A stretch of 64,000 nucleotides of DNA from IMGVR_UViG_3300040801_001224:248001-312000; one strand, 5' to 3'. Counted from the first letter of the stretch, positions 12,148-56,754 are shown. The notes: generated by a model not told the origin, from the sequence alone. Numbers and translations are program-made.

Positions 12148-12372
12148 ATGTCTACAGAAAAGTAGTAAAAATCCAGAGACCTAGGTCTGTAAGCTAGGGA
12201 GCATTAGAAGAGACATCTTCTATTCGGGGAGGGCAACAAGACTCTTGTGTCGGACACCAATCCTGCTATATTTTACATATTATTCTAAAATAGTGATAAA
12301 TAGGAATAAGCGTAAGATAAGGTGCTACCAACACCTTACCCTACTAAACATAACAATAATTGGAGTATTATT

Positions 12373-13242
12373 ATGCCTACTACTATTTATCAAGACTGGA
12401 ATCCACGTCACTATTATATTATAAGAAATAAAACCTCTGGAAAACTATACATTGGCCAAACTATAAGAATAATTTTAGAAGAATATTTAGGATCTGGAGA
12501 ATATTGGAAATCACACTGTGAACGCAATGGTGGCTATAATAAAGAAAATATTGAGGTATTATACAACAAATACTACGAAGATAAAAATAAAGCACAGCAG
12601 TTTTTAGACGAAGTATATGAGAAAGAAGGAAGATATTGGGATAAAGGAAACACTAAATGGGCAAATTTGATGCCTGAAACTACATCTGCATATGACCCAT
12701 TGGTTATGTCTGAGATACAAAAAAGAAGAATTGAAAATGGAACACATCATTTATTGAAAGAAAATCGCAAGGTTCTACATACTTCGACTGAATTAACTCC
12801 CGAGCAAGCAAGAAGTATGGCGTCAAAAAGAATTGAAGGCGGAACACATAACATTGGATGCGGGAAAGTATATTGTGTGACCAGAACTGGAGAAATTGTC
12901 AATATTGATGTAGATGTATACGAAGCACAGCAAGGAGAAATGTGCGATTGGGATTATGTTAGGCCTAACTCTAATGAGGGTAGAAACCGTACTGGAAAGG
13001 TAAAACCAGAAATATCTGATGAAACAAAGAACAAATTAAGGCACGTTCAAATGAAACAAATTGAGTCAGGTAACCACAACTTAAAAGGTAGTGTCACTTG
13101 CCGCAATAAAAAGGGAAAAGTAGTCCAGGTTCCAAAAGAAATATATTATGCCCAAGTTGGGACATATTGTGATAGAGAATATGTCACAATAGGATCTATT
13201 GAGGGTAGAAGAAGAGCAGGAAAACCTCCGCGCTATCAATAA
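12373..13242 (+). mobile_element. free-standing GIY-YIG (Seg-like) homing endonuclease gene
   Basis: YYIIRNKTSGKLYIGQT, YLGSG, WANL; repeated C-terminal G.HN/HL modules. Confidence 0.85.
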
Positions 13243-13710: not shown

Positions 13711-13783
13711 ACTCTGTTGGAGAAACCGGTTATCTCGTCAGACTTTCAATCTGGAATTACGGGTTCGAGCCCCGTACAGAGTG
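13711..13783 (+). tRNA. tRNA-Glu(TTC), no encoded CCA
   Basis: ACTCTGT/ACAGAGT, TCAGA-CTTTCAA-TCTGG. Confidence 0.9.
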
Positions 13784-13794
13784 CAAACTATTAC

Positions 13795-14300: not shown

Positions 14301-14391
14301 GGAAGGTACCGCTAAGTGGCTGGCAACCTGGTTTGAACCCAGGGGCGTTGATTGAGAGTCGGCGGGGGTTCGATTCCTCTACCTTCCTCCA
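14301..14391 (+). tRNA. tRNA-Ser(TGA)
   Basis: CCTGG-TTTGAAC-CCAGG, long variable arm, CCA. Confidence 0.92.
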
Positions 14392-15993: not shown

Positions 15994-16051
15994 CAATATA
16001 TTGACAACGCCACTTACTTGTGTTATTATAATAATATAAGGAGAAGATGTT

Positions 16052-16249
16052 ATGATATATGAAAGCTCAAAAGACTACGGTACCGGTGAAGTCACCCTAC
16101 TGTTTGATAATCGAACACCATCCTATACGGAAATATCAGAGCATGTTGAGGAGAACTATTCAATGACGTCCTTCTCATACATGATTGAGGAACCTACCGA
16201 ATATAATGGTCTGGTAAATCCTGGTATAGTGAGGGTAATTCAACAATGA
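16052..16249 (+). CDS. hypothetical protein
   Basis: ORF track; promoter TTGACA at 16001; AAGGAG SD. Confidence 0.65.
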   Translation: MIYESSKDYGTGEVTLLFDNRTPSYTEISEHVEENYSMTSFSYMIEEPTEYNGLVNPGIVRVIQQ

Positions 16250-16428
16250 AATTCCAAGTTACTGTAATAGAAAGCGAACGTGGCTGGGGTCAAAAGATTG
16301 ACGAAGTCCGTGAGTTCAACAGTGCTGACAAAGCATGGAAATTTTACGATGAAGTAAACAGCAGAAATACAGAACGTACTGCTCCAGACATATACTGGCA
16401 AGCACAGCCGCCAGTAAGAATAGAATAA
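16246..16428 (+). CDS. hypothetical protein
   Basis: ORF track; ATGA coupling. Confidence 0.65.
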   Translation: MKFQVTVIESERGWGQKIDEVREFNSADKAWKFYDEVNSRNTERTAPDIYWQAQPPVRIE

Positions 16429-16429
16429 T

Positions 16430-16505
16430 AGTCCCGTAGCTCAGTCAGGAGAGCGCAGAGCTGATAACTCTGAGGTCGCAGGAGCAAAGCCTGCCGGGAC
16501 TACCA
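16430..16505 (+). tRNA. tRNA-Ile(GAT), atypical T loop AGCAAAG
   Basis: CAGAG-CTGATAA-CTCTG, CCA. Confidence 0.85.
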
Positions 16506-16512
16506 ATTTAAC

Positions 16513-16587
16513 GCCGAGTGGTCTGGATGTTTAGGTGCTGGTCTGCAAAACCATGTTAACAGGGTTAGATTCCCTGACTCGGCTCCA
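16513..16587 (+). tRNA. tRNA-Cys(GCA)
   Basis: GCCGAGT/ACTCGGC, CTGCAAA loop, TCCA. Confidence 0.88.
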
Positions 16588-16588
16588 A

Positions 16589-16665
16589 GCCCCTATAGCT
16601 TAACTGGTTAAAGCGTCGAGCTCATAACTCGGGGAGTCCTTGTTCGAATCAAGGTGGGGGCACCA
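16589..16665 (+). tRNA. tRNA with CAT anticodon (probably Ile2)
   Basis: GCCCCTA acceptor resembles Ile2; CTCATAA loop. Confidence 0.88.
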
Positions 16666-16672
16666 ATTTTTT

Positions 16673-16830
16673 TAACTTGTGCCGGAACTGGTATACGGGG
16701 GTGTGGTCTCAGTCAATATGAATAGGGTTGTGAATAAAGAATAGCAACTCTTGTACCCAGGGCGAAAACCACCAGGCGGTAAGCAGTACAACGCAAAACG
16801 CCATTGTAGGTTCAAATCCTACCAAGTTAA
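16673..16830 (+). tRNA. class II (Leu/Ser-type) tRNA gene with about 53-nt insertion in the anticodon loop
   Basis: TAACTTG/CAAGTTA acceptor, Leu-type D arm, GTAGG-TTCAAAT-CCTAC, GTGGT/ACCAC stem enclosing 60 nt. Confidence 0.65.
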
Positions 16831-16902
16831 TTATGCGCGGTCCACGTTCCTCGCTGTAACTTTTGTTACATAGGTTGTGATTATGGCGGCGCACCATTTT
16901 AT

Positions 16903-16976
16903 AGGGTCATAGTGTAATGGTAACACCCGAGATTTTGATTCTCGTATTCCAGATTCGAGTTCTGGTGACCCTGCCA
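16903..16976 (+). tRNA. tRNA-Gln(TTG)
   Basis: CGAGA-TTTTGAT-TCTCG, GCCA. Confidence 0.93.
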
Positions 16977-17005
16977 ATTTTACGCAGTTCGTGGTAAATA
17001 CAGTT

Positions 17006-17392
17006 ATGTGTACCCTGACGAACTTTTGTGTATTAGATGACATCGACGGCATCACAATCATATGTTTAACAGACGATATGAGTCAACAAGATGCCATGCT
17101 TCTTATCGATCACTTGAGGGAACACGAACTGTACCATTATCGTCTGTTGGATTTTAATCAGTATCCATGTCAGATGTCTTCAAAAGACATTGAAGCACTT
17201 GCTGAATACGACAAGAAGTTTCCAGAAAAAAACTATGGTGCTCTGATTGCTAAAGACAACCTAACATATGGTTTAATGAGAAAATATGCGGCCCATCGTG
17301 AAATGGATGATCTAGCAACTATACGTGTATTTAGGACCATGCGTGAAGGCATAGCGTGGTTAAAAAAGAAAAGACACGATCAAGATAAATAA
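17006..17392 (+). CDS. STAS/SpoIIAA-like protein, copy 1
   Basis: LLDF...A(L/I)IA....YG..R...RVF....G..WL pattern; paralog of next gene. Confidence 0.65.
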   Translation: MCTLTNFCVLDDIDGITIICLTDDMSQQDAMLLIDHLREHELYHYRLLDFNQYPCQMSSKDIEALAEYDKKFPEKNYGALIAKDNLTYGLMRKYAAHREMDDLATIRVFRTMREGIAWLKKKRHDQDK

Positions 17393-17396
17393 TACT

Positions 17397-17780
17397 ATGC
17401 TAATACATGACTTATACGACTTTAACTATGTCGATGGTATTCTTATGACTACCCTTAAACATAGCCCGACACTTGAGACAATCAGACAATTGGTTGATTA
17501 TCAGATCAAGACAGACCGTTATCGTTATCGTTTATTTGATTTTAATGGTTTTACTCCTGCTGAAATGAGGGCAAGTGAAGTCAGAAGATTAGCAGACTAT
17601 GATCGAGCATATCCAGAAGAAAGTTACTCAGCTATCATAGCTGATGACGCACTATTGTTTGGCATTGAACGCATGTTTGAAACCTACAGAGACCGCAGTG
17701 GTTATTCTCGAGTAAGAGTATTCAACGATAAAGAAAATGGTCTAACCTGGCTTAAATTACTACAAGCCAATAATTCTTAA
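17397..17780 (+). CDS. STAS/SpoIIAA-like protein, copy 2
   Basis: YRYRLFDFN, AIIADDALLFGIERMF, RVFNDKENGLTWL. Confidence 0.65.
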   Translation: MLIHDLYDFNYVDGILMTTLKHSPTLETIRQLVDYQIKTDRYRYRLFDFNGFTPAEMRASEVRRLADYDRAYPEESYSAIIADDALLFGIERMFETYRDRSGYSRVRVFNDKENGLTWLKLLQANNS

Positions 17781-17798
17781 AATCTTTTGAAAAAAAGG

Positions 17799-17827
17799 TT
17801 GACAAACCCATTATACTCTAGTATAAT
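17799..17827 (+). promoter_or_regulatory. sigma70-type promoter of the giant ncRNA
   Basis: TTGACA-17-TATAAT. Confidence 0.85.
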
Positions 17828-17833
17828 ACAATT

Positions 17834-18697
17834 CAAAGTTAAGCAATGTCGCATATCGACGATAAGGCACTGAAAGGTGTCGAAGGATGGGAATCCAACA
17901 GCCCATCACCAGCAATGGTAGAGGTATGCAAGCCGAGACTCCAATAAGATATCAGTCATGCTGGTATTAGGAGACAAAGGCTCTCTTAGGGAAGTACCCC
18001 CAGGCCAACGGTGAGGGGCGAAAGTAACAGGTGAAGCTGACTACCTAGGGTTCAAAGAGCTAAGTTGACAGAGTCAAAGGGTAGTGTTACTTGTACAAGA
18101 CTTAGCGGTCGAGTGCTGTGACGCAGTCTTATAGGTAGTGTCCACAACCAGGGCATAATATCTAGAAAGACAACTGAAAAGTAACCTTAGCGGGTGAAAC
18201 AGTATTCGGTGTAGCGTATTCTGTACTCCAAAAGAGTATGGACCGTTTTAGAGGCGCACATCGAGGTTGGTTTAAGTTAGCTCAATTGGTTAGAGCAACG
18301 GCATTTTGGAGCCGTGGGTTCTTGGTTCAATTCCAAGACTTACATACAAAAACGCAAAGACGCCTCTACGTAGTAGTAACGATTAAATGACTTAATTGTC
18401 CGTACACTCCGGTGAATACGGAATAGGTTGAACTCGCAAGGTGACGCCTAGTTTGTTTGAAGTCGCACATTGGATTTAGCGATCCTTAACTGCTCGCAAG
18501 GCAGATGGAACACTGACAGCAGAAACGACTACTATAAAAGTGTAAACGCCAGCACTATAAAATGGGCAGTCATGCTTGATACCGAAAGACGAGACCACGG
18601 TCTGTCCAAGGGGAGTAGGGCTTAACTAGCAAGGTCGCACTTGTTAGGTACGAGTTCCGAATGATCAAGTGTAATACGTCCTAACTCTCAGACGTAT
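17834..18697 (+). ncRNA. probable GOLLD giant ncRNA with embedded tRNA-like domain
   Basis: about 860 nt with no ORF over 60 aa, GC-richer, many hairpins, two CTCGCAAGG motifs, 3' GTGTAAT..CTAACTCTCAG hairpin, tRNA-cluster context; family assignment from memory. Confidence 0.7.
18271..18344 (+). tRNA. tRNA-like domain (Gln TTG-like, 8-nt loop, no CCA) inside the giant RNA
   Basis: GCTCAATTGGTTAGAGC D arm, ACGGC/GCCGT, CTTGG-TTCAATT-CCAAG. Confidence 0.7.
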
Positions 18698-18783
18698 CTA
18701 ATTTATCATTTAGGCAAAAGTATTCATAAAGTTTTCAGTGTTAAATTTAAGATAGATAAATAACACTGTACTTAATAAGTAAT

Positions 18784-18870
18784 GCCGAGGTGGAGGAACT
18801 GGTAGACTCGCGGTCTTTAGGTGTCCGTTCCATATTTGGAGTGTGGGTTCGACTCCCACCCTCGGCACCA
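18784..18870 (+). tRNA. tRNA-Leu(TAG)
   Basis: GCCGAGG/CCTCGGC, TTTAGGT loop, long variable arm. Confidence 0.9.
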
Positions 18871-18886
18871 ATTGAAAAGTTTTAAT

Positions 18887-18962
18887 GCCACTATAGCTCA
18901 GCTGGTAGAGCGCCACACTTGTAATGTGGATGTCCCGTGTTCGATTCATGGTGGTGGCACCA
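18887..18962 (+). tRNA. tRNA-Thr(TGT)
   Basis: CCACA-CTTGTAA-TGTGG, CCA. Confidence 0.95.
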
Positions 18963-19090
18963 AACATAATGGTCCTGTTCCTATAATAGCAGGTATTGGT
19001 GGTAGAAATGTGTAAACGGTTTAAGGGCACCACCCTTCCTTAAACTCCGGACGATACGTAACCGGCCATAAATTTAAGGAGAATATTAAG

Positions 19091-19167
19091 GGGGCGGTAG
19101 CTCAATTTGGGAGAGCACCTGTTTTGCAGGCAGGCGGTTGCGGATTCAAGTTCCGCCCGCTCCACCA
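19091..19167 (+). tRNA. tRNA-Ala(TGC)
   Basis: G3:U70, CCTGT-TTTGCAG-GCAGG, CCA. Confidence 0.93.
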
Positions 19168-19217
19168 GTCCGACTCAATAAAACTCCACCAAAATTCCTA
19201 TATAGATAAATACTAAT

Positions 19218-20048
19218 ATGATAGGAAAATGCTCATGTGTTATATGTAAAAAACAGTACTCTGGAAAGGGGATACACACCCATGCCGACAGAACTCATGG
19301 TGACGAAGAGACAAAAGCCAAATATAGTTCAGGATATAATGGCAGATACAATGATCCAGAACATATGAAAAACTTAAAAAAGTCATTAAAAAAGTTTTAC
19401 GACAAAGAGTTAGGCCCTAAAAAAACATATAATGTTTCTTGCCATAAGTGTGGTAAAGATTTCGATGTAACCGAAAGAGAAAATCAATTTCCGTCTAAAG
19501 AAAAATATTTCTGTTCTGCAACTTGTAGAAATACTAGGTCGCATACAGAAGCCACAAAACAGAAAATAAAAAAATCACTCAGAAAATATAATGGGCCTGA
19601 AAAAATATATGAAAAGACATGCCCTTGGTGTAGTAAAATTCACACTACTAAGGAAAAAAATAAAAAATTCTGCTCGCGAGATTGTGCCACAAAACATAAA
19701 TCGGCAGAAGCCAGGAAACATCGTTCGGCATATAAGAACTACAGGGCAGATTGCGAATTTAGGTTTAATCTAAAAGATTATCCAGAAGAATTTAATTTCG
19801 CACTTATTGAAGAGCATGGATGGTATAGTGCGGCCAATAGAGGAAATAATCTATATGGTGTGAGCCGAGATCACATAGTAAGTGTGAAATACGGCTTTGA
19901 GAATAATATAGATCCAGCTATTATATCTCATCCAGCAAATTGCCAGTTAATGATACATTCGGACAATGTATCAAAATATACGAATAACGATTTAACAATC
20001 GACCAGCTTTTAGAGAAGATCGAAATCTGGAATAATAAATACATTTAA
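19218..20048 (+). mobile_element. HNH-type homing endonuclease gene with Zn-finger modules
   Basis: CxxC repeats, FCSxxC, SRDHIVSV..HPANCQLMIHSDNVSK. Confidence 0.85.
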
Positions 20049-20163
20049 CAACACCTTCTAAGCCTCTGTTTACATGCTCACCCCGGGAGGTTACTTAAAC
20101 GGCTCTCCAAGCCGCTCACGCTGAACAATTAGAGTTCATATGTCATGCTGTGGAGAGTTATTT

Positions 20164-20237
20164 GCGTCCATAGTTTAGTGGTAAAACGATAGCTTGCCAT
20201 GCTGTAGTCCCGAGTTCGACTCTCGGTGGACGCTCCA
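20164..20237 (+). tRNA. tRNA-Gly(GCC)
   Basis: GCGTCCA/TGGACGC, TTGCCAT loop, TCCA. Confidence 0.93.
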
Positions 20238-20371
20238 AACACGATGGTGGTCCGGGCTGATAAACTGGACGCCACCCAGTGTATTGTGGTGGATAGGCTG
20301 GAACCCTTTTGGAGCATGGTCCCAAAACTCTGAATAGAACGATCCTCTGCTCACATCACATAGTTTATATT

Positions 20372-21397
20372 ATGATAAAATACATTCTATTACTCTTATT
20401 ATTGGTTGGTTGCTCAGGTGATGATAACCCTGAGCCTGTTACTGAATTCGGCTTTACTATGCTTCAGCCCAATTCATACCAATTACAGTGGCCTGAAGAT
20501 CCAGATGCCACATATTACGTCATAGAAACAAACACAACGTCCAATATACTTAACATTGACTTATCAACTGTTGAATTGACTGATAACAAATATGTGTTTG
20601 AGTGGGATGTATTATTCAACGGCTCAGTACATCATAGGATAACGGCATGTACGATGAGTGGCTGTAAGGAGCCTGGAGAATGGTTATTAATATTTGAAGT
20701 GCCCCAATTTCCGGATACGCCATATCAGATAGACGTTCTAGCTGTATATGACAATAGAGCGTTTGATATAGACAACGGTATCGCAACTAAAATAAACAGG
20801 GACTTTGCTAAAATCAACGACATACTGCTCAATAACAATTTAGAGAGCTATGTAAAGTTTAACTTGGTGACAATGCGTCTGGACAGAACGTTTGATTGGC
20901 CACGTGACAACACAAGTGCTAATGAAGCGTTAATAAACGATCCTGAAATACAGGCATTGCGTGATGATGCTGGTGCAGATATAGTTATAGGTATAAACAC
21001 TGATCCGGGTTTCCCTGGTGGTGGTACCGGCAAAATGTATATGGATTCGGATAGAAAACAATTCTTCACGTTTTACACATACACCGAAATAGAACAACAG
21101 GCATACGCCACAGTAGCACAATATACGTTAGGTTCGGAAGATCACGTACTCTTACATGAGATGCTACACACATTTGGGTTACAGCATGACCTACAGACAG
21201 CGTTCATAGACTTCAATGTCAGTGCTGAATATTCTTATGCTCATGGTTTGCAGAGTGAACGGGAATGTACTATTATGGCAAGGGCGTGTCCACGTAATCT
21301 AATACTAGCAGATGAACCCACTAATACCGGTGGTTTTTCATCAAGTAACAAATTGCGTTTTATGGAAACAATTCCTGTTATAGCAGATTTTAGATAA
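20372..21397 (+). CDS. lipoprotein metzincin (reprolysin-like) zinc metallopeptidase
   Basis: lipobox LVG|C; HEMLHTFGLQHD; Met-turn CTIMA. Confidence 0.85.
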   Translation: MIKYILLLLLLVGCSGDDNPEPVTEFGFTMLQPNSYQLQWPEDPDATYYVIETNTTSNILNIDLSTVELTDNKYVFEWDVLFNGSVHHRITACTMSGCKEPGEWLLIFEVPQFPDTPYQIDVLAVYDNRAFDIDNGIATKINRDFAKINDILLNNNLESYVKFNLVTMRLDRTFDWPRDNTSANEALINDPEIQALRDDAGADIVIGINTDPGFPGGGTGKMYMDSDRKQFFTFYTYTEIEQQAYATVAQYTLGSEDHVLLHEMLHTFGLQHDLQTAFIDFNVSAEYSYAHGLQSERECTIMARACPRNLILADEPTNTGGFSSSNKLRFMETIPVIADFR

Positions 21398-23599: not shown

Positions 23600-23932
23600 A
23601 TGAAATAGACTAAACCAACATTACGTTTGTGGAAATGGGGAGAAGATAGATTTTCCCATCTTGGATACAAAATATTCACAGTGTTTTACTGTAAGTACTT
23701 TGACTTTTATATATTTAAATATCAACCAGGTGCCTATATACCAAAACACAAAGATCCAGGAAAATGGCATTACAGATTAAATTTTATATTTGGTGGTGAT
23801 GGCAAGTTTATATGTAAAGGTGCGTTAATAAACACCAAGTACATAACACTGTTTAGAGCGGACAAGTATTACCATAAGACAACACCAACTTCCACGACAC
23901 GTTATGTTGTAAGTTTTGGTCTAAAGTTTTGA
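23600..23932 (+). CDS. 2OG-Fe(II) oxygenase-like protein with in-frame TAG at codon 3 from the best start (or TTG start at 23627)
   Basis: IPKHKDPG (HxD), HYRLNF, distal H and RYVVSFG; AAGGA-9nt-ATG AAA TAG in frame. Confidence 0.65.
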
Positions 23933-23999
23933 GCCATTGAGGCCAGCCTAAGGATTCTAAACCCAGAAGGCGCCGGTTCAAGTCCGGCATGGCTCACCA
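23931..23999 (+). tRNA. aberrant 69-nt tRNA-like gene, possible CTA anticodon
   Basis: GAGCCAT/ATGGCTC-ACCA and GCCGG-TTCAAGT-CCGGC perfect; tiny D arm; weak anticodon stem around TTCTAAA. Confidence 0.5.
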
Positions 24000-26398: not shown

Positions 26399-26433
26399 TT
26401 GTTTGTATTGAAGTCTAAGTGATAAATAAAAGT

Positions 26434-27186
26434 ATGGACAAACCATATCACTACGTTTATCGCATCACAAATCTCCTGGAGTCAAAACATTATTATGGCT
26501 CCAGGAGTTCGATAAATAAACCACATGAAGATCTTGGAGTTGTGTATTTTTCGTCAAGTAGTGACGAGCAGTTCAAGAAGCTTCAGGTGTCACAGCCAGA
26601 AATATTTAAATATAAGGTAATAAAATCATTTAGTAGCAGAGAGGATGCGATTTTATTTGAAATAAAGTTACATAAAAGATTCAATGTCAGTAGTGAAGAC
26701 AAGTTCTATAACAAAGCAATTCAGTTGACTTCTGGTTTCAGTAACTACGGAAATAAAGAGATAGGAGACAAAATTTCCGACAAAGCCATCGGCCGTTTTA
26801 AGGGGCAAACTTATGAAGAAATTTACGGTGAAAACAAAGCAACAGAACTAAGGAAATTGCGTTCTGAAAACATGAAAAGTCATTTGAAACAAAATCCAGG
26901 AATCAGAGACGGTGAAAAAAATCCAAATTATGGAAAAAAATGGAATGATGAAAAACGAAAAAAAATGTCTAAAAGACAACAGGGTGAAAACCACACTCAA
27001 TATGGTTACTTTTGGGTTACAGATGGCAAAATAAATAAAAAATTACCGCCGAACTCTGAAATACCCAACGGCTTCACAAAGGGAAGAACTTGGCCTATTA
27101 CACAATGTCCTCACTGTGGTTACGAAGGCCGTGGACCAAATATGAAAAGAATACACTTTGATAGATGTGAAGACAAAAATAAATAA
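26434..27186 (+). mobile_element. GIY-YIG-type homing endonuclease gene with NUMOD3-like repeats
   Basis: YHYVYRITN..KHYYGSR, YFSSS, FYNKA, GEKNPNYGKK. Confidence 0.85.
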
Positions 27187-27284: not shown

Positions 27285-27359
27285 AGTCCGGTAGCTCAGA
27301 GGCAGAGCACCTCGTTTACACCGAGGGGGTCGGGATCTCGGAATTCCCCCGGACTACCA
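27285..27359 (+). tRNA. tRNA-Val(TAC), atypical T loop
   Basis: CCTCG-TTTACAC-CGAGG, CCA; T loop CTCGGAA. Confidence 0.88.
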
Positions 27360-52820: not shown

Positions 52821-53867
52821 ATGTCTAAACAATACGATCTAATCGTCTTTATAGGGCGATGTGAGCCTAACCATATAGGTCACAATAAAATTATCCGCAA
52901 AGCTACAGAAATGTCCAACAGTGTTCTAGTACTGTTGGGAAGCGCAAATCGACCACGTTCAATTAAAAACCCATTTACTTTTGAAGAAAGAAAGAAGTTC
53001 ATCCAAAGAATATTTGGTTCTGCTAAAGTTGAAGGTATCATTGATTACGACTACCAGGATACACTGTGGACTGAGCAAGTCTACCAAGCAGTAGACAACA
53101 ACCTTAAGGACCGTGGGTTAAATCCACGTGATGCTAAAATTGCTGTCCTTGGTCATGAGAAAGATGAATCATCATACTACTTACAATTATTTCCTACCTG
53201 GAAGTTCTTAGACTTTGGAAAGTTTACTGGAGATGGTAATCAATTAATCGACGCCACCAAAATACGTGAACTTTACTTTGAAGGTCATTTAGAATATTTG
53301 CGTGGTGTACTTGATCGCACTACTTATAACGAAATGTCTGCTTTTATGATTACCAAAGAGTATAAGCAGTTGGTTAAAGAGTATGAGTTCATTAAAAAGT
53401 ATAAAGAGCAATGGGCCGATAGTCCTTATCCACCAACATTTATGACTGTGGATGCCATTGTTATTCAAGGCAGTCACGTACTACTCATCAAGCGTAAGTC
53501 AGAACCAGGCAAAGGGCTGTGGGCCATGCCAGGTGGTTTCATACAGCCTTATGAAGTATGTAAGGATGCTATGTTGCGTGAGCTTAAGGAAGAAACAAAG
53601 CTAAAAGTACCTACTCCAATATTAGAAAAGAGCATTGTACACCAGCAATTGTTTGATGATCCAGGCCGTTCAACGCGGGGGAGAACATTCACACAGGCGT
53701 TCTTAATTCATCTAACAGGCGGTAACGGTGAGTTACCAAAAGTCAAAGGTGCTGACGATGCTGAAGAAGCACGTTGGGTTCCACTACACGAATTTGAGAA
53801 CATGAGTGCAGAAATGTATGAGGATCATTACTCAATTGTACACTTAATGAAAGGTTTTATAAACTAA
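52821..53867 (+). CDS. nadM: bifunctional NMN adenylyltransferase / ADP-ribose pyrophosphatase
   Basis: FIGRCEPNHIGH, LGSAN, KNPFTFEER, DAT.IR; Nudix GG......A..REL.EET. Confidence 0.95.
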   Translation: MSKQYDLIVFIGRCEPNHIGHNKIIRKATEMSNSVLVLLGSANRPRSIKNPFTFEERKKFIQRIFGSAKVEGIIDYDYQDTLWTEQVYQAVDNNLKDRGLNPRDAKIAVLGHEKDESSYYLQLFPTWKFLDFGKFTGDGNQLIDATKIRELYFEGHLEYLRGVLDRTTYNEMSAFMITKEYKQLVKEYEFIKKYKEQWADSPYPPTFMTVDAIVIQGSHVLLIKRKSEPGKGLWAMPGGFIQPYEVCKDAMLRELKEETKLKVPTPILEKSIVHQQLFDDPGRSTRGRTFTQAFLIHLTGGNGELPKVKGADDAEEARWVPLHEFENMSAEMYEDHYSIVHLMKGFIN

Positions 53868-53916
53868 AGTCCTAAGAATAGACTTGGGCAATCAACCAAT
53901 AAAGGGAGACTTTATT

Positions 53917-55413
53917 ATGAAAAACTTCGAAAACGGCCTACTGAGCCAAATCAGAAACACATATGGTATCGCAAGCGATACTGACTCTTACAAACTATCT
54001 CACCACGTCCAATACAAGTTGGGTGCTGACATGATGATTTCATATATTGAATCACGTGGCGGTGAGTTTGATGAAACTGTATGGTTTGGCCTACAGTTAA
54101 TCATTAAAGAATACTTGATGCAACCTATTACCAGCGAACAAGTTGATAACATGATTGCGTTTGAAAAAACACACCTTGGCGGTAACGTTACTGGTGACTT
54201 GGAAATTGCTCTACGCACTGTAGTCGAAGATTATGATGGCATGTTGCCAATTCGCATACGTGCTGTGGAAGAAGGTTCAATCATCCCAGTTAAAAATGTG
54301 CTGGCAACCATTGAAACCAGTGTTCCAGACCCACGCATCTTTAGCTTAGTTTCTTACTTTGAGACTAAGATCCTACGTGTTTGGGCACCAACTACTGTAG
54401 CCACTATGAGCTACAATATCCGCAAGCATATCCTTGCTGGCTTAGAACTAACGAGTGAAGATCCACAAGGACAAATTCCATTCAAGTTACACGACTTCGG
54501 TGCTCGAGGTGTGAGCTCATTGGAGACTGCGGCATTTGCTGGTGCTGGACACTTAGTTTCATTCCTGGGTAGTGATACAACCATTGCTATCATGGCCGCT
54601 AACTTGGGGTACAATGAAGAAATGAGTGCTTTTAGCATCCCAGCTTCAGAACACAGCACAACCACAATGTGGGGTCCTGATGGTGAGCAAGCGTTCGTAG
54701 ACAACATGTTTAAGAACTACGCTAAAGAAGGAGCTATCTTTGCTACAGTAGCAGACAGCTTTGATATTCTTAACTTCGTAGATCGGATTGCGCCTAAGAT
54801 GAAAGACCGTTTGATTGAGTCTGGTGCTACATGGGTTATACGCCCTGACAGTGGTGATCCAGTACTCACTCCGATTAACGTTGTTGAAAAGCTCGCCGAA
54901 CACTTTGGTTACGAAGTCAATGCTAAGGGCTTTAAAGTTCTTAACAATGTACGTGTTATCCAGGGTGACGGCATCAATATTGATGATGTACGTGACATTG
55001 TTGATATCATGATCCAGAAGGGTTGGAGTATTGACAACATTGCGTTTGGTATGGGCGGTGGCCTGTTACAAAAGAACAACCGTGATACACAGAAGTTCGC
55101 AATGAAATGCTGTGCCGCACGTATTGATGGCGAATGGGTTGATGTGTACAAAGACCCTAAGATCTACGATCCAAACACTTGGGGCGTAATCAACAAGCAG
55201 GGTGACAACGGCTTTAAAACATCCAAGAAAGGACGCTTAGAGCTTATGTACAACTCACAGACTGACACTTGGGAGACTATGCCTAAGAGTATTGCCAACG
55301 ATTACAATGGCAAGTTTGGGTGGACTAAGAAGCTGGAAACAGTATATGAAAACGGCAGATTAGTCAAAGACCTAACCCTGGCGCAGGTCCGTGCCAACGC
55401 CGGAACATTCTAA
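53917..55413 (+). CDS. nadV: nicotinamide phosphoribosyltransferase
   Basis: DTDSYK.SH, LHDFGARG, PASEHS, VADSFD, IRPDSGDP, IQGDG, GMGGGLLQ. Confidence 0.95.
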   Translation: MKNFENGLLSQIRNTYGIASDTDSYKLSHHVQYKLGADMMISYIESRGGEFDETVWFGLQLIIKEYLMQPITSEQVDNMIAFEKTHLGGNVTGDLEIALRTVVEDYDGMLPIRIRAVEEGSIIPVKNVLATIETSVPDPRIFSLVSYFETKILRVWAPTTVATMSYNIRKHILAGLELTSEDPQGQIPFKLHDFGARGVSSLETAAFAGAGHLVSFLGSDTTIAIMAANLGYNEEMSAFSIPASEHSTTTMWGPDGEQAFVDNMFKNYAKEGAIFATVADSFDILNFVDRIAPKMKDRLIESGATWVIRPDSGDPVLTPINVVEKLAEHFGYEVNAKGFKVLNNVRVIQGDGINIDDVRDIVDIMIQKGWSIDNIAFGMGGGLLQKNNRDTQKFAMKCCAARIDGEWVDVYKDPKIYDPNTWGVINKQGDNGFKTSKKGRLELMYNSQTDTWETMPKSIANDYNGKFGWTKKLETVYENGRLVKDLTLAQVRANAGTF

Positions 55414-55524: not shown

Positions 55525-56754
55525 ATGGCAACTTACGGCAAATCAGGACTATCACCAGAGATGGAACGTACCATCATATCAGCTCGTGTACGTATGCTGA
55601 TTAGTGCTCCTTTCTTTGGTACCCTTGCCACACGCCTAATCATCAAGAAAGCTGGTGATTGGTGCCCTACATTTGCTACTGATGGCAAATATCTGTATGT
55701 TAATCCAGAGTTTATGAAAGAGCTCGACAAGCATGAATTAGAGTTTGTTGTTGGTCATGAGGTGATGCACTGTGTTTATGACCACATGGGCCGACGTGGT
55801 GGACGTGATCCCAAGCTATGGAATGCGGCCGCAGACTTTGTTATTAACCTTGAGCTTGTAGATCAGAACGTTGGCAAAATGCCCAAGATGGGTCTGCTGG
55901 ACGAGAAGTATCGTGGCTTAAGTTCAGACGAGGTTTACGAACTGCTTGAAGAAGAGCAAGACAAGAACGGCGACCAGGGTTATGAAACACTGGACGTTCA
56001 CATGGAGCCTAACAGTGGTGGTGGTGATGGTGATGGTGATGGTGATGCTACCAACGGTCCTATCTCAATCTCAGAAGAAGAGCGTAAAGCTTTAAGCGAT
56101 GAAATTAAACAGGCTGTGATGGAAGCCGCTAAGGCCGCCGGTGCTGGCAATGTTCCAGGTGGTGTCAAGCGTATGATTAAAGATTTGGTTGAGCCTGAAA
56201 TGGACTGGCGTGAGCTATTACAAGCTGAACTGCCAAGCATGTTTAAAGATGACTTTACTTTCTCACGTCCTTCACGTAAGAATAGTTCTTTAGGTGGTAT
56301 CTACTTGCCTGGACAGGACCAAGCTAATCGTGTAGAATGTGCTATTGCTATTGACACATCAGGTTCCATTGGTGAGTCAATGCTACGTGACTTTATTTCA
56401 GAAATTAAAGGCATCATGGACCAGTTCGATGACTTTGTTATCACCATGTGGTTCTTTGATACGCAGACATACACCGTACACAAGTTCAATCCAGATAACT
56501 TACATGACATTCTGGAAGTTGAAATTGAAGGTGGCGGTGGTACTGACTTCGTCTGTAACTTTGACTTAATGAAAGAAATGGATTTAGTTCCTGAGAAGTA
56601 TATTTGCTTTACAGATGGATTTCCGTGGGACAGTTGGGGTGATCCGGATTATTGCTCCACAATCTTTGTAGTACATGGGAGTCCAGATATCACTGCTCCT
56701 TTCGGACAGACCGTTTACTACGATCACAAGAAAGAAGGAACAACTAAGGGTTAA
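55525..56754 (+). CDS. metallopeptidase-like plus vWA domain protein (DUF2201-type MoxR partner)
   Basis: ATDG, HEVMH, WN.A.DFVIN, DTSGS MIDAS, GGGGTDF, FTDG. Confidence 0.92.
   Translation: MATYGKSGLSPEMERTIISARVRMLISAPFFGTLATRLIIKKAGDWCPTFATDGKYLYVNPEFMKELDKHELEFVVGHEVMHCVYDHMGRRGGRDPKLWNAAADFVINLELVDQNVGKMPKMGLLDEKYRGLSSDEVYELLEEEQDKNGDQGYETLDVHMEPNSGGGDGDGDGDATNGPISISEEERKALSDEIKQAVMEAAKAAGAGNVPGGVKRMIKDLVEPEMDWRELLQAELPSMFKDDFTFSRPSRKNSSLGGIYLPGQDQANRVECAIAIDTSGSIGESMLRDFISEIKGIMDQFDDFVITMWFFDTQTYTVHKFNPDNLHDILEVEIEGGGGTDFVCNFDLMKEMDLVPEKYICFTDGFPWDSWGDPDYCSTIFVVHGSPDITAPFGQTVYYDHKKEGTTKG

What the first reader, a model, noticed from the sequence alone, without database searches (positions are those of the whole stretch)
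17799..18697. Probable GOLLD giant RNA carrying a defective tRNA-like domain on a hairpin tip
Seen: promoter, about 860-nt structured RNA, and a tRNA-like insert (18271-18344) framed by TAGAGGCG/CGCCTCTA. Known: some GOLLD RNAs embed tRNAs and GOLLD function is unknown. Here the insert has an 8-nt loop, an acceptor mismatch and no CCA, so it looks like a retained structural display rather than a source of tRNA.
Basis: partly seen in the sequence, partly recalled or inferred. Interest (0 to 1): 0.7.

Follow-up and report, generated by a model that had tools for sequence, protein, structure and literature searches.

The report
Phage GOLLD RNA with decayed tRNA
A 328-kb T4-like marine phage makes an abundant ~860-nt GOLLD RNA (a family known to self-assemble into RNA cages) whose internal linker holds a tRNA-Gln that has lost its decoding features; this is a new, well-documented member of a known family, not a new kind of RNA.

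Summary
A perfect sigma-70 promoter (17799-17827) precedes an ORF-free, ~863-nt structured RNA (about 17835-18697). A tRNA-shaped insert lies at 18271-18345. It is a GOLLD RNA. The Rfam GOLLD model matches end to end (81.8 bits, E about 1e-22, below the curated 150-bit cut-off). The RNA also aligns over both domains with environmental GOLLDs that pass the cut-off (135-196 bits). Both domains show conserved structure against shuffled controls (z -6.5 and -7.7). Three microbial-mat metatranscriptomes contain RNA contigs for 17857-18691 only. These run straight through the insert, and flanking genes read zero. The insert sits in GOLLD's variable linker, which is closed by a strongly covarying pseudoknot helix rather than a simple hairpin. 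A ~93%-identical marine-sediment relative carries a canonical tRNA-Gln(UUG) with CCA at the same spot. The window's copy has an 8-nt anticodon loop and no CCA, although 24 of the phage's 26 tRNAs encode CCA. More distant relatives hold further-decayed tRNA remnants or none. Embedded tRNAs, and even an unexpressed pseudo-tRNA, are already published for GOLLD. So this is a new member of a known kind. Whether the tRNA shape is kept for a purpose or is just decaying is unresolved.

The parts
17799..17827 (+). Sigma-70-type promoter: TTGACA (17799-17804), 17-nt spacer, TATAAT (17822-17827). Expected transcription start is near 17834-17836.
   Evidence: 12 of 12 consensus matches. The X6 relative differs only at 17809 in the spacer. 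RNA contigs begin at 17857.
17835..18697 (+). GOLLD RNA transcript, about 863 nt.
   Evidence: RNA contigs cover 17857-18691 at word depth ~40-65 in three metatranscriptomes. Flanks read 0 in RNA and ~4x in DNA. No ORF longer than 51 aa. Fold z = -2.85.
17835..18205 (+). GOLLD 5' domain (variable domain of the family). It includes a GNRA hairpin at 17867-17880 and a 25-nt block at 18176-18200 that is identical in the relatives.
   Evidence: Aligns with L003's 5' domain. Consensus fold z = -6.5; 29 compensatory pairs against 13 +/- 3.5 in column shuffles. Natural variants keep pairs: 17950/17966 U-A to C-G, 17980/18060 G-C to A-U, 17868/17879 C-G to U-A.
18206..18264 (+). First hairpin of the Rfam GOLLD model. 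Outer stem 18206-18212 pairs with 18258-18264. Middle stem 18213-18216 pairs with 18244-18247. Inner stem-loop is 18221-18241 with an invariant CAAAA loop (18229-18233).
   Evidence: Rfam alignment. The outer stem covaries in five sequences, including two double changes in the X6 relative (18206/18264 and 18207/18263). The A-rich loop corresponds to the conserved A-run loop L14 described in the cryo-EM paper.
18249..18256 (+). 5' strand of the linker-closing pseudoknot helix (UAGAGGCG).
   Evidence: Pairs with 18361-18368. Five of seven pairs show compensatory changes among window, L003, L008 and L009.
18265..18360 (+). Variable linker. It starts with the invariant GGUUGGUU (18265-18272) and ends with AAACGCAAAG (18350-18359).
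   Evidence: Alignment of the subclade. It corresponds to the unstructured linker of the Rfam model, which the cryo-EM work places in the cage interior.
18271..18345 (+). tRNA-Gln-derived, tRNA-shaped module. D, anticodon and T helices are intact and the elbow bases are present. It has an 8-nt anticodon loop (18303-18310), a U18272/C18343 mismatch and no CCA.
   Evidence: Rfam tRNA 49 bits. ARAGORN calls an anticodon of tttg. The X6 relative at the same site is a canonical tRNA-Gln(UUG)+CCA. 7 of 8 differences lie in unpaired positions, P = 0.0115. The cloverleaf is 5 kcal/mol less stable than an alternative fold.
18361..18368 (+). 3' strand of the linker-closing pseudoknot helix (CGCCUCUA).
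18361..18697 (+). Conserved GOLLD 3' domain, ending in a hairpin (18673-18692) whose loop UAACUCUCA is conserved.
   Evidence: The Rfam GOLLD match ends at 18694. Four-sequence consensus fold z = -7.65; 31 compensatory pairs against 6.7 +/- 3.1. In the X6 relative the terminal stem is swapped while the loop is kept.

Best explanation
The locus is the GOLLD RNA gene of a complete 328-kb T4-like jumbo phage. It sits inside the phage's tRNA array.

Proposed mechanism, step by step:
1. Host sigma-70 RNA polymerase transcribes the gene from a consensus promoter into a discrete, stable, abundant ~860-nt RNA (shown).
2. By homology to the solved GOLLD structures, the RNA folds into a separate 5' domain and a conserved 3' domain. 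It then self-assembles into a closed 12- to 14-subunit RNA cage (inferred, not tested here).
3. The two domains are joined by a variable linker closed by a covarying pseudoknot helix (shown). In the solved structures this linker points into the cage lumen (inferred).
4. In this lineage a tRNA-Gln(UUG) gene became lodged in that linker. A ~93%-identical relative still has it in canonical form with CCA (shown).
5. In this phage the copy has gained one base in the anticodon loop, changed positions 37 and 38, and has no CCA. So it most likely cannot decode. It is redundant with the free-standing tRNA-Gln(UUG) at 16903-16976.
6. It stays covalently inside the mature RNA. It is best read as a pseudo-tRNA, a passenger in a permissive site, whose helices have not yet eroded.
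For: GOLLD identity:
- Full-length Rfam match, E about 1e-22.
- Shares an exact 20-mer, and alignment over both domains, with GOLLDs scoring 186.8, 196.4 and 135 bits.
- Structure conservation z = -6.5 for the 5' domain and -7.65 for the 3' domain.

Phage context:
- 26 tRNA calls in the genome.
- Gp23 capsid match of 270.8 bits; complete genome with terminal repeats.

Expression:
- RNA contigs cover 17857-18691 only, in three runs, with 0 mismatches.
- One 760-nt contig spans the insert.
- Flanks read 0 in RNA but are present in DNA.
- Capsid-gene words are also present in the RNA runs, so infection was active.

Linker helix: covaries in five of seven pairs.

Degradation of the tRNA:
- The relative's insert is called tRNA-Gln(ttg) with CCA, while the window's has an 8-nt loop and no CCA.
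- 24 of 26 phage tRNAs encode CCA.
- 24 of 26 close their acceptor stem in the minimum-energy fold; the insert does not.

Passenger reading:
- L003 has no tRNA in its linker.
- L009 and L008 have progressively more degenerate tRNA-like remnants with different anticodons.

Literature:
- The linker lies in the cage interior, and tRNAs are sometimes present in it (10.1101/2024.12.08.627333).
- A pseudo-tRNA inside a GOLLD gene gave no separate transcript (PMC6582537).
Against: - The Rfam score (81.8) is below the curated cut-off (150).
- Cage formation and lumen orientation rest on homology alone.
- Assembled contigs show that unprocessed molecules exist, not what fraction is processed. A released ~75-nt tRNA would not be captured in such libraries; the neighbouring genuine tRNA genes also read 0.
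- All cloverleaf helices are intact and differences from the relative avoid stems (P = 0.0115). That is not what fully relaxed decay predicts, although the constraint could come entirely from the relative's branch.
- The direction of the CCA change is ambiguous. The more distant L009 and L003 share the window's AUAC tail, so the relative's CCA might be the derived state.
- An 8-nt anticodon loop does not by itself rule out decoding, because frameshift-suppressor tRNAs have one (general knowledge).
Confidence: 0.72

Rival explanations
1. The tRNA-shaped module is kept for its shape. Each cage would hold 12-14 L-shaped modules in its lumen. They would serve as a handle or decoy for a tRNA-binding factor, such as a host anticodon nuclease, a modification enzyme, RNase P or the ribosome, or they would tether cargo. 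On this view the remodelled anticodon loop and missing CCA are tolerated or even adaptive, while the helices and elbow are under selection.
For: - 7 of 8 differences from the ~93% relative lie in unpaired positions, and the one stem change keeps a U.G pair (P = 0.0115).
- The elbow bases (GG in the D-loop, UUC in the T-loop) are intact.
- tRNA-like remnants with an intact T-arm sit at exactly the same offset from GGUUGGUU in L008 and L009.
- Transcripts retain the module.
- The cryo-EM authors propose cages that expose covalently linked tRNAs.
- A published review proposes 'inhibited storage' of embedded tRNA (PMC12990946).
Against: - L003/L010, close relatives with an above-threshold GOLLD, have no tRNA-like fold in the linker. 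So the module is dispensable for GOLLD as such.
- The stem-sparing pattern could be due to selection on the relative's still-canonical tRNA alone.
- The acceptor stem is weak and loses to an alternative fold by 5 kcal/mol.
- L008's D-arm is replaced by a long hairpin, which would break the L-shape.
- No binding partner is known.
Confidence: 0.2
2. GOLLD acts as a tRNA precursor or store. The insert would be released by RNase P and 3' processing, receive CCA from the host enzyme, and function. With its 8-nt loop it would then act as a +1 frameshift or quadruplet decoder, or as a tRNA-Gln or tRNA-Lys variant.
For: - The insert passes the Rfam tRNA threshold at 49 bits.
- The sister copy is a canonical tRNA-Gln with CCA, so release may occur in that lineage.
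- ARAGORN reads a 4-base anticodon, which fits quadruplet decoding in principle.
- RNA-seq of this kind would not detect a released tRNA.
Against: - Contigs in all three RNA runs are continuous across both tRNA borders.
- The insert has no CCA in a phage where 24 of 26 tRNAs encode it.
- It has a U.C mismatch and only one G-C pair in the acceptor stem, and the cloverleaf is not the stable fold.
- G18270 can pair with the discriminator U18345, which is unfavourable for normal 5' cleavage (sequence; general knowledge of RNase P).
- A normal tRNA-Gln(UUG) already exists 1.3 kb upstream.
- The Northern blot in M. aubagnense found no released pseudo-tRNA.
Confidence: 0.05
3. It is not a true GOLLD but a new giant RNA class that only resembles GOLLD in part, since the score is below Rfam's gathering score.
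For: - 81.8 bits against a 150-bit gathering score; the default Rfam scan does not report it.
- No similar RNA among 50,697 cultured-phage records by blastn.
Against: - E about 1e-22 over the entire model.
- It shares long exact blocks and both domains with sequences scoring 186.8 and 196.4 bits.
- The shared helices covary.
- Part of the score deficit is the 75-nt insertion in the linker. L009, which also has an insert, scores 135.
Confidence: 0.03

Closest known systems
GOLLD RNA (Rfam RF02032), e.g. env-38 (14-mer cage, PDB 9MEE) and Streptococcus agalactiae GOLLD (12-mer, 9L0R)
   Same: - Full-length match to the family model.
- Conserved 3' domain with an A-rich first hairpin loop, GNRA-type CGCAAG loops, a long-range helix and a terminal UAAnUCUCA loop.
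- Large, separate 5' domain.
- Variable linker between the domains.
- Phage location inside a tRNA array.
- More than 800 nt and abundantly expressed during phage activity.
   Different: - Scores below the curated cut-off.
- Comes from a T4-like 328-kb jumbo phage of a marine or microbial-mat habitat, with no close relative among cultured phages.
- Oligomeric state not tested.
- The linker carries a tRNA derivative.
Mycobacterial GOLLDs with an embedded tRNA: tRNA-Phe in J13/15 of Mycolicibacterium (Morgado 2020, cited in PMC12990946), and the predicted pseudo-tRNA in M. aubagnense GOLLD (PMC6582537)
   Same: - A tRNA or pseudo-tRNA lies in the same variable linker of a GOLLD gene inside a horizontally moving tRNA array.
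- In M. aubagnense no separate tRNA transcript was detected, which parallels the unprocessed contigs seen here.
   Different: - Different host group and a different tRNA identity (Gln-derived here).
- Here a near-identical relative with the canonical tRNA-Gln+CCA shows exactly which changes separate a working-looking copy from the degraded one.
- The expression evidence here is environmental RNA-seq rather than a Northern blot.
ROOL RNA (Rfam RF03087)
   Same: Large phage or prophage RNA near tRNA islands. It forms a cage with a disordered variable linker in the lumen.
   Different: Unrelated sequence and fold. No ROOL match in the region even at E <= 10.
tRNA-like structures embedded in larger RNAs (the tRNA-like domain of tmRNA, plant-virus 3' TLS, MALAT1 mascRNA); named from general knowledge
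   Same: A tRNA-shaped module within a longer RNA that is recognised, or could be, by tRNA-handling proteins.
   Different: Those modules are terminal and demonstrably functional, being aminoacylated or cleaved. This one is internal, closed by a pseudoknot and lacks CCA, and no function has been shown for it.

Membership tests
GOLLD (RF02032) | Significant end-to-end match to the family covariance model | tested here: met
   Model positions 1-416 matched at 18206-18694. E 2.7e-21 for the region and 1.6e-22 for the genome. The cryo-EM study collected family members at E < 1e-5.
GOLLD (RF02032) | Score at or above Rfam's curated gathering score (150 bits). This is an operational cut-off, not a structural feature. 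| tested here: not met
   81.8 bits. Homologues sharing both domains score 186.8 (L003), 196.4 (L008) and 135 (L009, which also has an insert).
GOLLD (RF02032) | Conserved 3'-domain secondary structure supported by covariation | tested here: met
   Four-sequence consensus fold z = -7.65 against column shuffles. 31 compensatory pairs against 6.7 +/- 3.1, maximum 17.
GOLLD (RF02032) | Large structured but more variable 5' domain | tested here: met
   About 370 nt aligned with L003. z = -6.5; 29 compensatory pairs against 13 +/- 3.5. Natural variants are compensatory.
GOLLD (RF02032) | Hairpin with a conserved A-run loop (L14) just before a variable linker | tested here: met
   The CAAAA loop at 18229-18233 is invariant in five sequences while its stem varies. 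The feature is described.
GOLLD (RF02032) | Encoded by phages or prophages, typically beside or within tRNA clusters | tested here: met
   Complete 328-kb virus record with a T4-type capsid gene and 26 tRNA calls. The GOLLD gene lies between tRNA-Gln (16903) and tRNA-Leu (18784).
GOLLD (RF02032) | Expressed as a discrete RNA of about 800 nt or more | tested here: met
   RNA contigs cover 17857-18691 in three metatranscriptomes and flanks read 0.
GOLLD (RF02032) | Self-assembly into a closed homo-oligomeric cage with the linker inside | not testable with these tools
   Known only from cryo-EM of env-38 and S. agalactiae GOLLD. Inferred here by homology.
tRNA (RF00005), functional decoder | Cloverleaf recognised by the tRNA model | tested here: met
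   49 bits against a gathering score of 29. D, anticodon and T helices are all Watson-Crick.
tRNA (RF00005), functional decoder | Seven-nucleotide anticodon loop with U33 and a purine at position 37 | tested here: not met
   The loop is 8 nt, AUUUUGGA (18303-18310), and ARAGORN gives no amino acid. The relative has the 7-nt UUUUGAU.
tRNA (RF00005), functional decoder | Stable 7-bp acceptor stem | tested here: inconclusive
   6 of 7 pairs with a U.C mismatch and one G-C pair. The cloverleaf is at -17.1 against an alternative at -22.1 kcal/mol. 24 of the phage's 26 tRNAs close the stem in the minimum-energy fold.
tRNA (RF00005), functional decoder | 3' CCA, encoded in this phage's tRNAs | tested here: not met
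   The tail is U-ACA. 24 of 26 phage tRNAs encode CCA. Post-transcriptional addition cannot be excluded.
tRNA (RF00005), functional decoder | Released from the precursor and aminoacylated | not testable with these tools
   Contigs show that unprocessed molecules exist. Small RNAs are not captured in these libraries.
ROOL (RF03087) | Match to the family model | tested here: not met
   No ROOL match among hits up to E = 10 on 17600-18900.

The most novel reading that the evidence does not exclude
The linker tRNA of this GOLLD lineage is under selection for its L-shape rather than for decoding. The assembled cage would then present a dozen or so tRNA-shaped modules in its lumen as a decoy, sponge or docking site for a tRNA-recognising factor, for example a host anticodon nuclease used in anti-phage defence. 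The remodelled anticodon loop would be adaptive. That would give GOLLD its first concrete molecular function.
Probability: 0.12. Interest if true: 0.8.

Novelty: new member of a known kind. Interest (0 to 1): 0.42.

Why it matters
GOLLD is one of the largest and most elaborate bacterial or phage RNAs. Its function is unknown even though cage structures have now been solved. This copy adds four things:

1. **Detection.** It belongs to a divergent marine, T4-like-phage branch that the default Rfam threshold misses.
2. **Expression in nature.** In a natural community the full-length RNA is by far the most completely assembled transcript of its neighbourhood, and it keeps its embedded tRNA.
3. **A natural comparison.** A near-identical relative carries a canonical tRNA-Gln+CCA, this phage carries a copy with broken decoding features, and more distant relatives carry further-decayed remnants or none.
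4. **An explicit linker structure.** A covarying pseudoknot helix closes the linker.

Together these turn the open question, whether embedded tRNAs are cargo, a tRNA supply, a structural display or mere passengers, into a comparison that can be tested on two almost identical RNAs. It does not reveal a new class or mechanism.

Tried and rejected
- **Default Rfam scan of the window:** only tRNAs were reported. GOLLD appears only with the permissive threshold.
- **blastn against 50,697 phage records:** only a 60-nt tRNA-Lys-like hit, with no related GOLLD.
- **Neighbouring ORF (17397-17780) as a handle for related phages:** one weak, uninformative locus.
- **'Relatives' search:** not available for virus records.
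- **18-mer of the anticodon arm in viral contigs:** four hits, none a tRNA or GOLLD.
- **5'-domain degenerate motif in viral contigs:** returned only L003 again.
- **18-mer of the conserved block in 185,579 prokaryote genomes:** 15 hits, all chance matches without GOLLD context, so no prophage copy and no host clue.
- **Three-block pattern in viral contigs:** three more chance hits.
- **Recent duplication of the free-standing tRNA-Gln:** rejected, as identity is only about 50%.
- **RNAalifold's long-range pairing of 17867-17870 with 18084-18087:** rejected in favour of the local GNRA hairpin at 17867-17880. The natural variants support the hairpin, and one variant breaks the long-range pairing.
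- **RT-6 match on the minus strand at the promoter (27.8 bits against 46.7):** treated as spurious.
- **Morgado 2020 (PMC7549688):** could not be read because it is not held.
- **Not obtainable:** direct comparison of read depth across the tRNA borders, because the runs are held only as assembled contigs.

Full report
**1. What is in the sequence.**

The window is bases 248001-312000 of a complete 328,096-bp virus record with direct terminal repeats. The record encodes a T4-type major capsid protein (Pfam Gp23, 270.8 bits).

It also carries 26 tRNA calls, all on the + strand. Homing-endonuclease genes are scattered among the tRNA genes, and NAD-salvage genes lie further along the window.

Between the stop of an ORF at 17780 and tRNA-Leu at 18784 there is no ORF longer than 51 aa.

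A perfect TTGACA-17-TATAAT promoter lies at 17799-17827.

- Rfam's tRNA model matches 18271-18345 at 49 bits.
- ARAGORN reports 'tRNA-???' with a four-base anticodon, meaning an 8-nt loop.
- U18272 faces C18343 in the acceptor stem.
- The bases after the discriminator are ACA, not CCA.
- TAGAGGCG (18249-18256) and CGCCTCTA (18361-18368) flank the insert.

**2. Is it GOLLD?**

At Rfam's gathering thresholds only tRNAs are reported. With permissive settings, the GOLLD model RF02032 matches 18206-18694 over its entire length (positions 1-416). The score is 81.8 bits with E 2.7e-21, or 1.6e-22 for the whole genome. That is below the curated cut-off of 150. No ROOL match appears.

Homology settles the question.
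- A 20-mer from just upstream of the Rfam match (18181-18200) occurs in one other viral contig, L003.
- It also occurs in three metagenome contigs, L008-L010.
- Each of these carries a GOLLD: 186.8, 196.4, 135 and 186.8 bits.
- The three loci that extend well beyond the GOLLD (L003, L008 and L010) show it among tRNA genes.

The window and L003 align over the whole RNA, including the 5' domain that the Rfam model does not cover.

Column-shuffle controls show conserved structure in both domains:

| Domain | Sequences | z-score | Compensatory pairs observed | In shuffles |
|---|---|---|---|---|
| 5' | window, L003 | -6.5 | 29 | 13 +/- 3.5 (max 23) |
| 3' | window, L003, L008, L009 | -7.65 | 31 | 6.7 +/- 3.1 (max 17) |

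Near-identical variants in other public runs change paired positions together:
- 17950/17966 changes from U-A to C-G.
- 17980/18060 changes from G-C to A-U.
- 17868/17879 changes from C-G to U-A in a GNRA hairpin.
- 18206/18264 and 18207/18263 both change together in the first 3'-domain helix.

I therefore file this as a GOLLD of a divergent branch. The 75-nt insertion lowers its score; L009, which also has an insert, scores 135.

**3. Expression.**

Three metatranscriptome runs from one microbial-mat sample hold 80-87% of the sampled words of the region.

Laid on 16000-20500, their contigs cover only 17857-18691. They are 100% identical to the window, at word depths of about 40-65. The upstream ORFs and the downstream tRNA genes read 0 in RNA. 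The DNA run of the same sample covers everything at about 4x.

The ends fit the promoter and the end of the GOLLD model.

One 760-nt contig (17857-18616) and two others (from 18174 to 18691 and to 18621) run straight through the insert.

What this does and does not show:
- It shows that a discrete RNA is made.
- It shows that molecules retaining the insert exist in all three runs.
- It does not give the processed fraction, because contigs carry one mean depth.
- A free tRNA would not be captured in these libraries.

The capsid gene is also present in the RNA runs, with 0.39-0.40 of its words against 0.55 in DNA. So the phage was active in that mat. This agrees with reports that GOLLD rises during phage production (cited).

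**4. Where the insert sits.**

The framing 8-mers do pair, and the helix covaries:

| Sequence | 5' strand | 3' strand |
|---|---|---|
| window and X6 relative | AGAGGCG | CGCCUCU |
| L003 | CGGGGCG | CGCUCCG |
| L008 | GGCUACG | CGUAGUC |
| L009 | GGCAACG | CGUUGCC |

Five of the seven pairs show double changes.

The 5' strand of this helix lies inside another covarying helix, 18206-18212 paired with 18258-18264. The arrangement is therefore a pseudoknot that closes the linker, not a hairpin with the tRNA at its tip.

The linker always begins with GGUUGGUU and ends with AAA(A)YGYAAAG.

In the Rfam model this is the unstructured variable region. In the cryo-EM structure of env-38 GOLLD the linker is unresolved, but its flanks place it in the interior of the 14-mer cage. 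The authors note that phage tRNAs are sometimes present there. A review places a Mycolicibacterium tRNA-Phe in the same junction.

**5. What the insert is.**

A 254-nt contig from a marine-sediment DNA run covers 18133-18388 with 15 substitutions and 4 indels. Rebuilding it from the listed differences gives exactly 254 nt. ARAGORN then calls a 75-nt tRNA-Gln(ttg) ending in CCA.

The window differs from that relative as follows:
- One extra base in the anticodon loop (A18303).
- G and A instead of A and U at positions 37 and 38 (18309, 18310).
- Two extra D-loop bases.
- One change in the variable loop and one in the T-loop.
- One stem change that keeps a wobble pair.
- ACA in place of CCA-A.

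The window's copy is thus a tRNA-Gln derivative that has lost the features needed for decoding.

Supporting points:
- 24 of the phage's 26 tRNAs encode CCA.
- 24 of 26 close their acceptor stem in the minimum-energy fold, but the insert does not. Its cloverleaf is at -17.1 kcal/mol against -22.1 for the alternative. The same is true of the relative, so the weak acceptor stem with its U.C mismatch is old.
- The insert is not a recent copy of the free-standing tRNA-Gln(UUG) at 16903-16976, at about 50% identity. That gene does make it redundant.

Other subclade members vary:
- L009 has an Arg(UCU)-like element with two acceptor mismatches and no CCA. ARAGORN calls it, but the Rfam tRNA model gives no hit at E < 1e-3.
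- L008 has an element found only at a relaxed threshold, with its D-arm replaced by a 7-bp hairpin.
- L003 has no tRNA-like fold.

**6. Interpretation.**

The most economical reading is that the lumen-facing linker is a permissive site. tRNA genes from the surrounding array occasionally lodge there and then decay, and this copy is an early stage of that decay.

The rival reading is that the tRNA shape itself is kept. Its support:
- 7 of 8 differences fall in unpaired positions (P = 0.0115).
- T-arms are retained at a fixed position in L008 and L009.

Its weaknesses:
- The constraint could come from the relative's branch alone.
- L003 does without the module.

Polarity is also not fully clear. 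L009 and L003 share the window's AUAC tail, so the relative's CCA could be secondary.

A working tRNA, for example a quadruplet decoder, is unlikely for the reasons given in section 5.

**7. Novelty.**

The following are all published:
- GOLLD itself.
- Its phage and tRNA-array context.
- tRNAs in its linker.
- A predicted pseudo-tRNA inside a GOLLD gene, with no separate transcript on a Northern blot.

New here:
- The divergent T4-like marine branch, which default thresholds miss.
- The environmental expression evidence.
- The explicit covarying pseudoknot around the linker.
- The canonical-versus-degraded pair of near-identical relatives.

This makes it a new member of a known kind. Interest is moderate, mainly as a natural experiment on what embedded tRNAs do in GOLLD.

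Noticed in passing
window 18174-18203 (RNA runs X1, X3): A 97-nt RNA contig (depth 24-35) shares only these 30 bases with the window and then differs upstream. A second, related GOLLD variant seems to be expressed in the same microbial mat.
   Followed up: no
window 18176-18240 (run X8, seawater metatranscriptome): An 859-nt RNA contig at depth 27.6 matches only this conserved block, with 6 differences. This is a more distant GOLLD that is expressed in seawater.
   Followed up: no
window 17768 and 18671 (run X6): The ~93-95% relative is a mosaic. Its sequence becomes unlike the window upstream of 17768 and behind 18671. There the terminal hairpin stem is fully swapped (ACGUC/GACGU to AGCU/AGCU) while the loop UAACUCUCA is kept.
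   Followed up: partly
L008:40-391 (metagenome contig Ga0265303_10029876): A GOLLD-bearing contig also carries a permuted (two-piece) tmRNA. It scores 123 bits on RF04321, and ARAGORN gives the tag ANDDVYNMPMAA. It lies about 2.6 kb from the GOLLD, among tRNA genes.
   Followed up: no
window 13711-13784: tRNA-Glu(UUC) is the only other tRNA call of this phage without an encoded CCA.
   Followed up: no
window 27285-27356 and 23931-23996: Rfam's tRNA model hits these two places (48 and 29.5 bits) but ARAGORN does not call them. Conversely, ARAGORN calls tRNAs at 14301, 27982 and 42839 that the Rfam gathering scan did not list.
   Followed up: no
window 12322-13242, 26419-27186, 55525-56754: GIY-YIG (two) and HNH endonuclease ORFs lie in or near the tRNA array, as is usual for mobile tRNA regions of large phages.
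   Followed up: no
window 20309-21397: An ORF inside the tRNA array matches M12/reprolysin-type metallopeptidase domains (Reprolysin_5, E 7.5e-09).
   Followed up: no
window 52821-55413: An NAD-salvage gene pair: a cytidyltransferase/NMNAT-NUDIX-like ORF and a nicotinamide phosphoribosyltransferase (phrog_448, E 5.8e-134).
   Followed up: no
window 18101-18108, 18186-18193 and about 18486-18491: The motif CUUAGCGG occurs twice in the 5' domain, and UUAGCG recurs as a hairpin loop in the 3' domain. All are conserved in L003. They may be repeated tertiary-contact modules.
   Followed up: no
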